Position numbers and translations under genes: made by a program. From contig ADNK01001091.1 in NCBI GenBank assembly GCA_000320545.1, positions 14,322-78,321 on the forward strand: a stretch of 64,000 nucleotides of DNA, written 5' to 3'. This stretch comes from Bigelowiella natans CCMP2755. Taxonomy: Eukaryota; Protista; Cercozoa. Every line of letters starts with the position of its first letter. Within the stretch, counting starts at the first letter, position 1. Shown here one piece after another: positions 46,482-52,707 of this stretch. The notes under the pieces were generated by a model. The model was not told the DNA's origin, did not search any database, and saw only the letters and a list, made by a program, of their open reading frames with translations.

Positions 46482-48419
46482 CTAATCAAGTTCCTCGGTA
46501 TCATCATTGCCAGCAGAGTGATTGGGCGGGGCTCCTCCAGCCGTAGCACCAGCATCGCCACCACCGTACAACTTCGACATGATTGGATTAATTATTGCCT
46601 CCAGCTCCTTCTGCTTGTCCTGGAACTCATCAACCTCTGCATTTTGATTCTTCTCAATCCACTCAATAGTCTCGTCAACAGATTTCTGTGCACGTTCCTT
46701 GTCAGCAGTGGCAATCTTTCCCTCGAGTTTCTTGTCATTCAGCGTATTGCGCACATTGTAGCTGTAGCTCTCCAGCTTGTTTTTTGCCTCCACACGGGCA
46801 GCAGCAGCGTCGTCATGGGCCTTCATCTCCTGAGCTTTCTTGACCATGTTGTCTATCTCCTCAGGGCTCAAGCGTCCACTATCGTTTGTAATCGTGATGC
46901 TCTGCGATTTTTGCGTCTTCTTGTCTCGTGCGGTAACGTTTAAGATGCCGTTGGTATCTACATTAAACGTGACCTCGATTTGAGGGACACCTCTGGGAGC
47001 TGGTGGAATGCCTTCGAGGTTGAATTGGCCAAGGAGGTGATTATCCTTCGTCATCCTTCGCTCTCCTTCATACACTTGGATTGTCACTGCAGGTTGGTTG
47101 TCTTGGAACGTGGAGAAGACCTGTGATTTCTTGGCTGGTACTGTCGTGTTACGCGGGACCAGTGGGGTCATTATTCCTCCTGCTGTTTCAATTCCAAGAG
47201 AAAGAGGAGCAACATCGATGAGTACGATGTTGGAAGCATCTCCTTTTGTCTGGCCACTCAACACTGCTGCTTGCACAGCGGCACCGTATGCAACCGCCTC
47301 GTCTGGATTGATGTTTTTGCAGAGCTGCTTTCCATTGAAGTAATCGCTTAAGAGATTCTGAATCTTTGGAATACGTGTTGACCCACCAACCAAGACCACC
47401 TCGTCAATGCTGCTCTTGCTCATCTTGGAATCCTTGAGAACTTTGTCTACAGGCTTCAATGTTCCTCTGAAGTAGTCGTCACAGATGTCCTCGAATCTTG
47501 CTCGGGTGATCGACGCAGAGAAGTCAACTCCTTCGTGGAGTGAGTCGATTTCAATCTGGGCTCGGGTGCTGCTAGAAAGTGTCCGTTTTGCTCTCTCGCA
47601 AGCCGTACGGAGACGTCGAATTGCCTTGTCGTTTCCTTGGAGATCTAGACCTCTGTTTTTCCGCTTGAATTCCTTGGCGAAGTGCTCCATAAGAGCCTGA
47701 TCGAAGTCCTCACCGCCAAGATGCGTATCCCCAGCCGTCGCTTTCACCTCGAAGACCCCTTCGTCGATGGTCAAGAGGGACACATCAAAAGTTCCACCTC
47801 CAAGATCGAAGATTAGAACATTGCGCTCCCGTTTGTCGCCCTTCTGCATCTTGTTGAGACCATATGCGATTGCAGCGGCCGTAGGTTCGTTAATAATGCG
47901 CTTTACGTTTAGGCCCGCAATCGCTCCGGCATCCTTAGTTGCCTGTCTCTGGGAGTCGTTGAAATACGCTGGCACTGTGATGACGGCGTCGGTGACCTTA
48001 TGGCCAAGGTAGGATTCAGCTGTTTCCTTCATCTTGGTTAACACCATGCTGGAGATTTCTTCTGGCGCGAAAAGCTTGTCCTCTCCCATGTGACTAGCTT
48101 TTATCATCGGCTTTCCCCCCTGCCCTTTAGTCACCTGGAAAGGCCACATCCTTTTGTCATGCTCCACCGACTTCTCGTCAAATCGCCGCCCGATCAGCCG
48201 CTTAGCACCGAAGATGGTATTCTTCGGATTTCTGGAAGCTTGATTCTTTGCGGCCTCACCCACAAGTCTTTCTTGATCTGTAAACGCGACGTAGGATGGT
48301 GTGGTCCGGTTGCCCTGATCGTTTGCGAGGATCTCGACGGTGTTGTTTCGCCAGACACCTACGCAGCTGTAGGTCGTCCCAAGGTCAATTCCAACTGCTG
48401 GAGCTTTAGTTCCGGCCAT
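46482..48419 (-). CDS. HSP70: Cytosolic heat shock protein 70, intronless
   Basis: [34 protein letters not shown] and [12 protein letters not shown]. No signal peptide. C-terminal EELD, a variant of EEVD. Confidence 0.98.
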
Positions 48420-49105: not shown

Positions 49106-50026
49106 ATGGAAGTTTACAAACACCCTTCGTATACGAGGTACCATGCGAGCAGGTGCTCTGTTGCAGCCTTTTGGAGTCTTATTTGCTACCTGGCGGTACT
49201 TGCTGCGCCATTCTTCCTTGCCTACGCCAGCTACGGATTCTGGAAGAAGGAGGGCACATACTATGAGCAACCCATCATAGAATACCAGCATAAAATAGCG
49301 ATGATCGTAGAGTGTTCGTCCGGGGCTTTGGTGTTCAGCTCTATTCCTGAGTTCAACTTGATGGCAGGATTCTCAAACGTAAGGATCCCCCAAGTGCAGT
49401 CGTTTTTGGACGATCCTAACCTCGATGGCAGGCCTGACTACTTCAACCTCACCATCACCGTTCCCTTGCAGGGAACAGAAGAAGTATATGGAGTGTCGGT
49501 TCTCGCGTTCTTCGATGTAGAGTTGAAAGATCGAGTCAAGCTTGAGATGTCCGGCTTAAGCTATGTTTCACAAACTTCGTCTCTTCCCGGCTCGCGTTTT
49601 TCGATGTTCGGAGACCTCAAATTTACGCAACTTTATCCGTTATCGTTGAGAGGGAGTAGGACAGATTACAATGCTGATCTGCTCTCCGCATCCTCCATTC
49701 TCTCTGTAGAAGACACGCACTTCACTAATATTCTGGCTAAGAGTGCCTCAAGGAATGAGACTATTAGAATAGAAAATGAATTAAGCTACTGGAGACCAGG
49801 AAGAGAGAATCAATTTACTTTCGACATGAGATTACGTATACCCAAGTCGGAGATAAGATATATCCCAGGGCCCAGCGAAGTCCTTAAGTTTTCTTGGATG
49901 CAATATCTGGCTGTGGGCGTCATTGTGTATTTCGTGGTCGATTGGATACTTTACTTCACTCACTCCCATGCTTTAGTGACTTCATTCCGGACTGTGGATC
50001 ATAAAGCAAAAGAACATACCTTCTAA
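49106..50026 (+). CDS. TMEM231: Ciliary transition-zone transmembrane protein 231, intronless
   Basis: N-terminal TM followed by SYGFWKKEGTYYEQP, DPNLDGRPD, GDLKFTQ, RNET, YIPGPSEVLKFSWMQYL and a second TM, all characteristic of TMEM231. Confidence 0.92.
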   Translation: MEVYKHPSYTRYHASRCSVAAFWSLICYLAVLAAPFFLAYASYGFWKKEGTYYEQPIIEYQHKIAMIVECSSGALVFSSIPEFNLMAGFSNVRIPQVQSFLDDPNLDGRPDYFNLTITVPLQGTEEVYGVSVLAFFDVELKDRVKLEMSGLSYVSQTSSLPGSRFSMFGDLKFTQLYPLSLRGSRTDYNADLLSASSILSVEDTHFTNILAKSASRNETIRIENELSYWRPGRENQFTFDMRLRIPKSEIRYIPGPSEVLKFSWMQYLAVGVIVYFVVDWILYFTHSHALVTSFRTVDHKAKEHTF

Positions 50027-50571
50027 AGGCTGCGCATCCACATTCGACGATACGATCAAGTCAACGAGTTTTAGAAGTATGTGACGGATGTTAAATGTGT
50101 CAACTACGGCGATCGAAGCCGGGACCGTTTTAGAAGTATACTTACATAATAATCTATATTGCACGGGCACATGTGTACTGTCAGCATATGCGCAGTTACA
50201 TATATGTCCATGTATTGCATTGCACCTGCATGGGCCGCAGCCTGTTACCCACCATCGAGACTAAAGGAGCACATTGTTACGCGCGCGTGAAATGCAAAAT
50301 CATTCGCATCCATGTGGCCGTGCCCAATTATATATAAGCATAGCCATGATCGATGATATTGTTTCATGCTACGTATATACGACAAATCATACGCCACCAC
50401 GTACATGAGCGATGCATGTGTACGTGTGCAATGATCAATTGAATTATATAGATCTGCATGACATGGAAAGATGATGATGATGATGATGATCAAGAACATT
50501 TTATGCGTGTAGTGTGCGCACGCGTTCCTCTCTTCCTCTATACCTCCTCAAACATAACCCTTCGCTTTGCC

Positions 50572-50618
<47 letters not shown>

Positions 50619-50696
50619 TATATAAAAGCAATAATATGCTCATCATTTTAATACGAATCGAATACTCGCCGCTCGAACATTCATCTTCAATTGTGG

Positions 50697-50777
50697 TGCA
50701 TAATTATAATATTCGGACTAACCCCTCCCCATCAAGGATGATAGACTTTCCGGGTGCTAGGCTTCATTTGAATTGCA
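50697..50777 (-). promoter_or_regulatory. SECIS element (type II) in the 3' UTR of the selenoprotein gene
   Basis: Minus strand reads AUGAA GCCUAGCACCC GG AAA G UCUAUCA UCCU UGAUGGG GA GGGGUUAGUC CGAA. This gives an AUGA/GA quartet, helix II, unpaired AAA and an apical mini-stem. Helix I is UGCAAUU/AAUUAUGCA. Confidence 0.75.
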
Positions 50778-50901
50778 GATGACTGGTTTCGTAGAGCATT
50801 TCAATACGGCAGAGAGTATCGTACAGGATATTGATGATTCATGAAGAACACATCCTATATTTAACTTTTCCGCCTTTAATCTTTTGACGAAGATCTCTGC
50901 A

Positions 50902-51573
50902 CTATGATTTAGACTTTTTACCCTCTCGTTCGGACTTAGTAGATCCTAATCTGCGAGAGGAGGACTTTCTTTGAGAAGGAGACTTTGATGTTCTTCTGGA
51001 GGGAGACTTTGATTTTCTTCGAGAGGGCGACTTGGACTTTCCTCTCGAAACTGTTTTAGGTTTCTGACTTCCTTTGGCCCGCATCTTCTTCATCATCGCC
51101 TCTCGCAACTTTGATTGCTTCTCAGCTAAAGACAATTTCTTTGGCTTCCACTTCGTGGCCTTTTCTACCAAGAGGTTGCGGGTCATACCTTTTTTCTTTT
51201 TTGCTCCCTTTTTATGAATCGCATCGTAAACTTTAACGTATGGGCAGGCCTCGCCAGGATAAAATGGAAACCCGTCGGTCGCCTTGGAGTGCACTAGCTC
51301 CTCGCCGACAATGATTTCGAACTGCCCCACTGTTCCAATCGCGTACGTGAATGAAATGTCCTTCGCCTCAAAGAACTCGTGGCAAAGGCTGTGAAGATCT
51401 GCGACCATAGGCCACGTGATACCTCAGCGGTCCTCCACCACAATGTGTACTTTTGCTTTGGCTTTCATCCGCTTCTTGAAGTATAGTATGTACGTCATTG
51501 AGTTCTCTGACGGCGGGGAGCCGCTGGGGAGCGTATTGCACTTGTCCGACTTACCTTCACCTTTATCCCCCAT
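50902..51573 (-). CDS. SelW/SelT/SelH (Rdx family) selenoprotein with Sec encoded by TGA at 51424-51426 and a basic C-terminal extension
   Basis: The frame is open from ATG 51573 through one TGA. It reads KVHIVVEDR-U-GITWPMVADL...GTVGQFEIIVGEELVHSKATDGFP, matching Rdx V.V.YCxxUG...G.FEV.V.G.LIHSK...GF. A SECIS lies ~135 nt downstream of the stop. Confidence 0.82.
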
Positions 51574-52707
51574 GCTTCTGTCTTCCTAGTTTCTCTTGAC
51601 GTTTCAGTGAATTCGACGACATGGAAACAAAGGCCAATTTAATCGCTGCGACAAGAAAATCTCAGAATTACCTAGCTAATTGCGTCACATGAGCTGGCAT
51701 CATTCATTCGCTCACGGGACGGATGAGCACGTCTGTTGATCCGCGCGGTGTGCAACTTGGCTCAACGTGCATTGCGCTTTTCAGCACGATGAGCGCTTAA
51801 GTTGAATGTGGGGAAATGCTCGTCGCTGCATTCAATTGTCCTTCACTGGGGCTTCGCGCCCTGCCAAGGTCGTCCTGTCCGCCCAAGTGTCATGGCGTGC
51901 GGGTGTGAAACAAAACCTCCTTCAACTTTTCCATGACTTGGTGGTCTTGTTGATTGAGGAGGACACGAACGAGTCAGCGTGTCTCGTGCGGCTTCCAACT
52001 GCTCCAATGGAAACGCTTCTTTCTTTCTTTCTTTCGAATCAATTCGAATGCAGCATTGGAACCACTGAACCACTTCACTCACTCTGTGCATCGTGCAGCC
52101 ATCTTGAACGCACACACAGCGCTCACTTTGTGCAGTTTCCATCATCGCTTCATTTCCTTTTCCACACTTGCTAACCACATCGAGCACTGCCCAGACTGTC
52201 ACCATCATGCAGCCATTTCCGCGATTTCACGGTTTCCACATGCTCGTTCCATTCCCCGTCAGATTTTCCTGCTTGTCATCACTGCTCAAATGCTGTCCCT
52301 GCTGCACGATGAACAGATCGTTTGTCGCGGTCGTCGACACATTGCCATGCGAAATGCCTATCGCGTGCATGTGGTCACATGTGCTTTGCAAATTGACACA
52401 CAACAGCAGATTGACGCATTGAGTTGAGGAGTACACACAGCATATAAGCACACGCGTTCATGCCCCGCCACATTACATGTGTAAATAACTGCAATCTTTG
52501 TGTCTATGCTTCGCCGAGACAAATGCGATCTATCACTTGATACATGCTATGCAATGTCAGATATATGAGAACGAGCCTAGCTACTAACTAGTGCATGAGG
52601 CTAAGCGCTAGCTAGTAGCATGTTCTTTGATGTTTAATCAGCATCGATCTTGGCGTCGAATGCTTGCTATCATCCAGGTGCTAAAGTCGGTTGTTCTATT
52701 GACTACC

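What the first reader, a model, noticed from the sequence alone, without database searches (positions are those of the whole stretch)
50902..51573. Hidden selenoprotein: Rdx (SelW/T/H) fold with a non-canonical ExxU active site
Seen: the ORF track truncates this gene at 51408, but the frame continues upstream through a single TGA (51424-51426) to ATG 51573, giving KVHIVVEDR-U-GITW...GQFEIIVGEELVHSK..DGFP. Established: Rdx selenoproteins carry CxxU at exactly this position after the first beta strand, followed by G.FEV...LIHSK. Here Glu occupies the place of the resolving Cys (E-D-R-U). Inference: a Sec enzyme that cannot form the usual intramolecular selenenylsulfide and so has different redox chemistry. 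Standard gene callers would mis-annotate it. A 48-nt in-frame GTAAGT...CAG intron near the start is possible and does not change the frame.
Basis: partly seen in the sequence, partly recalled or inferred. Interest (0 to 1): 0.9.

Follow-up and report, generated by a model that had tools for sequence, protein, structure and literature searches.

The report
SelW-like algal selenoprotein lacking partner cysteine
A marine alga has an expressed gene that very probably reads an internal 'stop' as selenocysteine, making a SelW-like redox protein in which glutamate replaces the cysteine that normally pairs with the selenium, so it likely recycles its active site differently; no copy was found in any other species and nothing has been tested at the bench.

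Summary
The genome is Bigelowiella natans. In detail: an intronless 223-codon frame (51573-50902, minus) has one in-frame TGA (51426-51424) in K-V-H-I-V-V-E-D-R-stop-G. Four transcript contigs keep the TGA unspliced; the JGI model that splices it out is not seen. The TGA most likely occupies the Sec column of the genome's own canonical SelW (KVHVVYCGG-U-GY). A form-2 SECIS-like hairpin lies in the 3' UTR (core 50767-50712): best of 428 kb scanned with my descriptor, 0/5000 shuffles, but missed by Rfam and by a weak home-made model. A transcribed paralogue without the SECIS has about five frameshifts and two stops, while this copy has none (Rdx-core dN/dS 0.30), and already carries the Glu. So a real ExxU selenoprotein is likely (about 0.8). 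It fails the family's CxxU criterion: a SelW-derived variant, with a 100-residue Lys/Ser/Arg tail. 'Different chemistry' is inferred only: Cys64 or Cys110 could resolve the Sec, and cysteine-free AxxU sites occur in this genome's glutathione peroxidases. The scan's first stage had also noted the SECIS on this window.

The parts
50902..51573 (-). Intronless coding frame, 223 codons with one in-frame TGA (about 25 kDa, pI about 10.2)
51574..51596 (-). Short 5' UTR; four transcript contigs begin at 51583-51596, so ATG 51573 is their first AUG
51454..51573 (-). 40-residue N-terminal extension (Cys12; basic stretch at residues 33-41), absent from canonical SelW L002
51205..51453 (-). SelW-like Rdx domain, residues 41-123: strand 1, ExxU, helix, three strands with GxFEI and VHSK, GFP, three-residue insertion carrying Cys110, last helix
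51433..51435 (-). Glu47 codon at the position of the first Cys of CxxU; also Glu in the broken paralogue
51424..51426 (-). In-frame TGA (codon 50), inferred selenocysteine
50905..51204 (-). Basic low-complexity tail, about 100 residues (27% Lys, 19% Ser, 11% Arg)
50962..51041 (-). 24-nt tandem repeat, 3.3 copies, encoding KSPS-containing units
50697..50778 (-). Form-2 SECIS candidate: AUGAA core at 50767, helix II, unpaired AAA at 50749-50747, apical mini-stem, CGAA at 50715-50712; helix I weak
   Evidence: not found by Rfam or model R1
50583..50901 (-). 3' UTR covered by transcript contigs, ending in a GT microsatellite (50573-50615)

Best explanation
A lineage-specific, intronless duplicate of SelW in Bigelowiella natans. 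SHOWN: the mRNA carries the UGA unspliced, a SECIS-like hairpin 657 nt downstream, and an otherwise intact frame that has been kept while a sister copy decayed. INFERRED (about 0.8): the SECIS directs Sec insertion at codon 50, giving a 223-residue protein with an ExxU site at the start of helix 1 of an Rdx fold. INFERRED (weaker): Sec50 acts as a lone nucleophile that attacks an oxidised partner thiol or peroxide, as Sec13 of SelW does with 14-3-3 (PMC8508763); with no Cys at -3, the mixed selenenylsulfide is released by glutathione or by a distal cysteine (Cys110 in the inserted loop or Cys64), as in GPx and 1-Cys/monothiol enzymes (own knowledge); Glu47 would tune or orient the selenolate. 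The basic Ser/Lys/Arg tail probably sends the protein to the nucleus or nucleolus and binds nucleic acid, making it a functional analogue of SELENOH (inferred from composition only).
For: TGA retained in four collinear transcript contigs whose 5' ends cluster 10-23 nt before the ATG. Best ungapped placement of canonical SelW exon 1 puts the TGA on the Sec column with that column neutralised (score 16, next 7; shuffle p 0.054); Sec-to-GxFE spacing 33 versus 34 in L002 and about 32 in bacterial Rdx. SECIS descriptor hit is the strongest of 22 in 428 kb of strand-bases and the only one at or below -12 kcal/mol; 0 of 5000 UTR shuffles reach it; the same descriptor finds similar hairpins behind the canonical SelW, a second Sec-Rdx and three GPx genes and none in the Cys-form Rdx locus or next to the paralogue. 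A strain variant turns a U.G pair of the apical stem into U-A. tRNA-Sec present; 23 selenoproteins reported for the species (PMC7539508). Paralogue: about five frameshifting indel events and two premature stops versus none here; dN/dS 0.30 in the Rdx core (Fisher p 0.003), 0.49 overall; a neutral copy would stay open with its TGA in 2% to 0.1% of simulations at 0.1-0.2 substitutions per site. Model of the post-TGA piece matches mouse SelW 2NPB (TM 0.54).
Against: No orthologue in any other species. Rfam SECIS and model R1 miss the hairpin, its folding energy is not better than shuffles (z -0.6; also true of most control SECIS), helix I is weak, the core-to-AA spacing is 13 rather than 11-12, and the descriptor was set after I had seen the candidate. 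Exon 1 of two more distant paralogues places best two residues off or elsewhere, and a bacterial profile does not extend over strand 1. The dead paralogue also keeps its TGA, so TGA retention since that duplication is not evidence for Sec chemistry. dN/dS before the TGA is not significantly below 1 (p 0.5). Structure models are low confidence (pLDDT 57) and lack strand 1. No catalytic evidence at all.
Confidence: 0.55

Rival explanations
1. Read-through is real but the Sec is not catalytic. The protein has become a basic nucleic-acid or chromatin binder, the redox motif decayed (Cys to Glu), and UGA plus SECIS persist as a vestige or as a switch that makes the full-length protein only when selenium is available.
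For: Loss of the otherwise invariant Cys, fast divergence (about 30% identity to the nearest canonical SelW exon), a tail longer than the domain, more replacement than silent changes in strand 1 between the two copies (5.5 versus 0.5). SECIS retention is needed for any full-length product whatever the Sec does.
Against: Stop-G was kept while most neighbouring residues changed since the split from canonical SelW; any sense codon would give full-length protein more cheaply. Constraint is strongest in the Rdx core, weaker in the tail (0.30 versus 0.54).
Confidence: 0.22
2. The TGA is read as stop. The gene is a transcribed, recently relaxed copy, or the product starts at Met56 and the upstream frame is leader.
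For: No orthologues found; its sister copy is a transcribed pseudogene, so transcription proves little; Rfam finds no SECIS; one strain contig has an extra A that shifts the tail; public ORF calls start at Met56.
Against: No disablement in 223 codons against about seven in the sister copy; strong SECIS descriptor hit in the 3' UTR that the dead copy lacks; a Met56 product would lack the central strand of the fold; three in-frame AUGs precede Met56. The extra A lies in an A-run in one of four contigs, in a contig that is also chimeric.
Confidence: 0.16
3. The functional mRNA is spliced as in the JGI model (intron 51554-51399), removing strand 1 and the TGA, to give a 171-residue selenium-free protein.
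For: Good GT-AG signals, frame preserved; the model exists in public annotation. Assembled contigs can hide a minor isoform.
Against: All four transcript contigs run straight through both possible introns; the product would lack the first strand and the active-site loop; the SECIS would be unexplained.
Confidence: 0.05

Closest known systems
SELENOW / SelW (Rdx family, Pfam PF10262); in this genome L002 and L053
   Same: Strand-1 pattern KVH-V, stop-G, GxFEI and VHSK motifs, last helix ending in a GAKKK-like run; closest solved fold 2NPB; form-2 SECIS
   Different: ExxU instead of CxxU; no introns; 40-residue N-terminal extension; small insertion with Cys110; 100-residue basic tail
SELENOH
   Same: Rdx fold joined to basic, nucleus-type sequence; SELENOH is nucleolar and has an AT-hook and RKRK signal (PMC13437758)
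   Different: SELENOH keeps CxxU and has its basic part at the N-terminus; the domain here is SelW-like; localisation here is untested
SELENOV
   Same: A fast-evolving, lineage-limited SelW duplicate that gained a long extension (PMC3316567)
   Different: SELENOV keeps CxxU and the SelW introns; its extension is N-terminal; independent origin
Known SelW motif variants (UxxU in amphioxus and Ostreococcus; CxxR in pufferfish SelW2c)
   Same: Departures from CxxU inside the family (PMC7539508, PMC3316567)
   Different: Those keep a chalcogen at -3 or lose the Sec; here Sec is kept and the -3 residue is acidic. No paper listed contains the string ExxU
Glutathione peroxidases (AxxU) and peroxiredoxin-type TxxU selenoenzymes
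   Same: Thioredoxin-fold Sec with no Cys three residues before it, recycled by an outside or distal thiol (own knowledge for the chemistry)
   Different: Different families; none of their catalytic partner residues was looked for or is expected here

Membership tests
Rdx (SelW/T/H/V) family | CxxU or CxxC motif after strand 1 | tested here: not met
   E-D-R-TGA; paralogues have CGGU, CASU, CTGC; 23 of 23 bacterial Rdx have CxxC. Filed therefore as an Rdx-derived variant, not a canonical member
Rdx (SelW/T/H/V) family | Pfam PF10262 score above 22.6 bits | tested here: inconclusive
   20.2 bits, E 7e-4, for the post-TGA piece alone; the read-through protein could not be submitted
Rdx (SelW/T/H/V) family | tGxFEI(V) stretch followed by VHSK and GFP | tested here: met
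Rdx (SelW/T/H/V) family | beta-alpha-beta-beta-beta-alpha fold | tested here: inconclusive
   post-TGA piece models as helix, three strands, helix (pLDDT 57); 2NPB TM 0.54, Foldseek E 0.3; second model used an Rdx alignment, so partly circular
Eukaryotic selenoprotein gene | In-frame UGA present in the mature mRNA | tested here: met
   four transcript contigs; raw reads not seen
Eukaryotic selenoprotein gene | SECIS in the 3' UTR (RUGAN, helix II, unpaired AA, NGAN) more than about 110 nt from the UGA | tested here: met
   descriptor hit best in 428 kb, 657 nt from the UGA; caveat: Rfam and model R1 miss it, but also miss or barely score most control SECIS
Eukaryotic selenoprotein gene | UGA aligns with Sec or Cys of homologues | tested here: met
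   closest paralogue L002 and spacing to GxFE; register from more distant paralogues is ambiguous
Eukaryotic selenoprotein gene | Sec machinery in the genome | tested here: met
   tRNA-Sec 68.5 bits; several other TGA-bearing selenoprotein genes. Protein factors (eEFSec, SBP2) not searched
Eukaryotic selenoprotein gene | UGA and SECIS conserved in orthologues of other species | tested here: inconclusive
   no orthologue retrieved
Eukaryotic selenoprotein gene | Selenium incorporated into the protein | not testable with these tools
   needs 75Se, mass spectrometry or ribosome profiling
Ribosomal uL18/L5 C-terminal domain (PF14204), for the tail | Significant homology to the uL18 C-terminus | tested here: not met
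   15.7 bits against a cut-off of 23; E 0.26 genome-wide; 22% of shuffles of the organism's own uL18 tail score as well

The most novel reading that the evidence does not exclude
A natural Rdx selenoenzyme in which a carboxylate replaces the resolving cysteine, working as a monoselenol reductase in the nucleus or nucleolus through a protamine/H1-like tail, and made only when selenium allows UGA read-through.
Probability: 0.35. Interest if true: 0.7.

Novelty: new variant of a known kind. Interest (0 to 1): 0.5.

Why it matters
The biochemical role of SelW-type proteins, and which residue of CxxU does what, is still unsettled. A natural, apparently selected version that keeps Sec but has lost the Cys is a ready-made test of whether the vicinal Se-S bond is needed, next to two canonical SelW genes in the same cell. 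It also shows that selenoprotein searches that demand CxxU or strong Cys homologues can miss diverged members. The weight is limited by its presence in one species and the absence of any experiment.

Tried and rejected
The read-through protein and spliced models were not submitted to search or folding tools; pieces and single exons were searched apart and the joined step was left out (local scripts used X at the stop). Orthologue searches found only B. natans: word-index searches, full HMMER scan (its other hit is a 4371-residue chance match), two metagenome scans. Rfam scan of the region: only repeat-driven noise. Single-sequence fold of the post-TGA piece gave no meaningful match. Bacterial Rdx profile did not cover strand 1. 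A loose ExxU pattern in the genome gave 777 matches, uninformative. uL18 origin of the tail rejected. Assembly error and the 48-nt or 156-nt introns rejected as the main form. The defining Rdx paper (PMID 17503775) is not held; the per-gene list of the 23 reported B. natans selenoproteins was not in the supplement text, so I cannot say whether this gene is among them.

Full report
Observation. On the minus strand an ATG at 51573 opens a frame that runs to TAG at 50904-50902 with a single internal TGA at 51426-51424, codon 50, in the context K-V-H-I-V-V-E-D-R-stop-G-I-T-W. The mechanical ORF list starts at Met56. The part after the TGA matches Pfam Rdx positions 27-63 (E 7e-4, 20.2 bits, cut-off 22.6), and the language-model search returns eukaryotic Rdx clusters as its top three leads. 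Exact look-up places the proteins in Bigelowiella natans, and the contig count equals that of the assembly listed in PMC7539508.

Transcripts. Four assembled contigs from JGI/MMETSP samples carry the gene. All are collinear with the genome from 51583-51596 to 50583-50657, with no intron and with the TGA. Their clustered 5' ends make ATG 51573 the first AUG. Three contigs differ from the genome by Pro55His, one silent change, one change in the 3' hairpin and a 6-nt deletion just after it.

Is the TGA at the Sec position? The genome has several ordinary Rdx genes: L002 (KVHVVYCGG-stop-GY), L003 (RFCAS-stop-GY), L053 (GG-stop-GYF, first exon not seen) and the Cys form L001. Sliding L002 exon 1 along the protein with the Sec column neutralised gives its best placement with the TGA exactly on that column (16 versus 7; shuffle p 0.054). 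The distance from that column to the Gly of GxFE is 33, against 34 in L002 and about 32 in bacterial Rdx. Exon 1 of L001 and L003 prefers other placements, and a bacterial profile covers only the GxFE-to-GFP part, so the register rests on the closest paralogue plus spacing. [quoted passage not shown]

SECIS. 135 nt after the stop, inside the transcript contigs, lies AUGAA (50767), an 8-10 pair helix, an unpaired AAA, an apical mini-stem and CGAA (50715-50712), the layout of a form-2 SECIS, 657 nt from the UGA and so within the range reported in PMC3316567. A descriptor-plus-folding scan finds it as the strongest of 22 hits in 428 kb of strand-bases and the only one at or below -12 kcal/mol; 0 of 5000 dinucleotide shuffles of the UTR reach its score and 5 reach -12. 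The same scan finds like hairpins behind L002, L003 and three GPx genes, and none in the Cys-form L001 locus or next to the paralogue. The strain change at 50730 converts a U.G pair to U-A. Against it: Rfam does not report it (Rfam SECIS_1 finds one sub-threshold hit in the whole genome), my five-sequence model misses it but scores held-out candidates at noise level, its energy is not better than shuffles, helix I is weak, and the descriptor limits were chosen after I had seen it. tRNA-Sec is present and 23 selenoprotein genes are reported for the species.

Selection. A second copy on another contig (L013) is 74% identical at DNA level from the 5' end to 50780, stopping 13 nt before the SECIS core. 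It is transcribed but has about five frameshifting indel events, two of them before or at the motif, and two premature stops; the window copy has none. dN/dS between them is 0.30 in the Rdx core (Fisher p 0.003), 0.54 in the tail (p 0.07), 0.61 in the N-terminal extension (not significant) and 0.49 overall, as expected if one branch is neutral and the other constrained. Simulated neutral copies stay open with the TGA in 2% to 0.1% of runs at 0.1-0.2 substitutions per site, before counting indels. The dead copy has the Glu codon too, so ExxU is older than a duplication with about 0.33 synonymous differences per site. It also still has the TGA, so TGA retention over that interval says nothing about Sec chemistry; the better argument is that stop-G survived the much deeper split from canonical SelW, to which the domain is only about 30% identical.

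Other species. None was found. Three word-index searches, a full HMMER scan and two metagenome scans returned only B. natans sequences. These searches depend on ORF calls, length limits and exact words, so absence is not shown.

Anatomy and mechanism. Residues 1-40 are an extension, 41-123 the SelW-like domain, 124-223 a tail of 27% Lys, 19% Ser and 11% Arg with three KSPS repeats. Models of the post-TGA piece give helix, three strands, helix at pLDDT 57; with an Rdx alignment the best credible match is mouse SelW (TM 0.54), which is partly circular. The resemblance of the tail's start to the uL18 C-terminus is not significant. In human SelW the CxxU forms an S-Se bond and the protein can be glutathionylated (PMC5364654), and Sec13 is the residue that binds 14-3-3 (PMC8508763). 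Here the vicinal bond is impossible. The simplest working model is a lone selenolate recycled by glutathione or by Cys64 or Cys110, both kept in the paralogue, as in GPx, whose four genes checked here have Ala at -3. Their distance to residue 50 could not be measured. A nuclear or nucleolar location, as for SELENOH (PMC13437758), is inferred from composition alone. The main rival is that read-through is real but the Sec is vestigial or serves as a selenium switch (0.22); a silent or Met56-initiated gene is less likely (0.16), the spliced form least (0.05).

Membership and novelty. It works like, and descends from, SelW, but fails the CxxU criterion, so I file it as an Rdx-derived variant rather than a canonical member. 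Reported departures are UxxU and CxxR; none of the papers listed contains ExxU. I could not check whether this locus is among the 23 genes of PMC7539508. Verdict: real feature, about 0.8 likely a true selenoprotein, new variant of a known kind, interest 0.5. The scan's first stage had separately noted the SECIS and the tail on this same stretch; these notes are not independent evidence.

Noticed in passing
L013 / L033 (G000:C2352 about 49800-50540, minus); transcripts L009-L011, L014: Transcribed pseudogene copy of this gene, with two 8-nt tandem duplications, further indels and two stops, lacking the SECIS; carried in public annotation as a 209-residue model (P0013).
   Followed up: yes
L002:1371-1755 (minus), SECIS near L002:1212-1269: Canonical SelW gene (YCGG-stop-GY) with two short introns and a clear form-2 SECIS.
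   Followed up: partly
L003 / L032 (G000:C2112, minus), SECIS near L003:793-851: Second Sec-type Rdx gene (FCAS-stop-GY) with a SECIS candidate.
   Followed up: partly
L053:139-545 (G000:C3503, minus, at contig end): Third Sec-type Rdx gene with an exon starting GG-stop-GYF and repeat-rich introns; not found by the Pfam search of the genome.
   Followed up: partly
L001:1495-2020 (minus): Cys-form Rdx (EFCTGCR) that resembles bacterial SelT/W/H-family proteins more than the other paralogues do.
   Followed up: partly
window 51435-51444 (minus): The codons for Ile-Val-Val-Glu share a 10-nt match, one frame over, with the Tyr-Cys-Gly-Gly codons of canonical L002; the Cys may have been lost by compensating frameshifts. 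Post hoc, could be chance.
   Followed up: partly
L015:1507-1561 (G000:C970): Strong SECIS candidate (only Rfam SECIS_1 hit in the genome); its gene was not identified.
   Followed up: no
L018, L019, L023, L024, L025: Four GPx genes with AxxU and one SelF/M-type gene with in-frame TGA; six of seven Sec genes checked share TGA followed by GG.
   Followed up: partly
window 46482-48419 (minus) and 49106-50026 (plus): Neighbours are an intronless Hsp70 and an intronless TMEM231, the latter convergent with this gene; an intron-poor patch in an intron-rich genome.
   Followed up: no
L008:1000-2128: Transcript contig is chimeric: joined through the GT repeat to an unrelated 307-codon gene not in the window; it also has an extra A at window 51202 that shortens the public ORF call to 95 residues.
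   Followed up: partly
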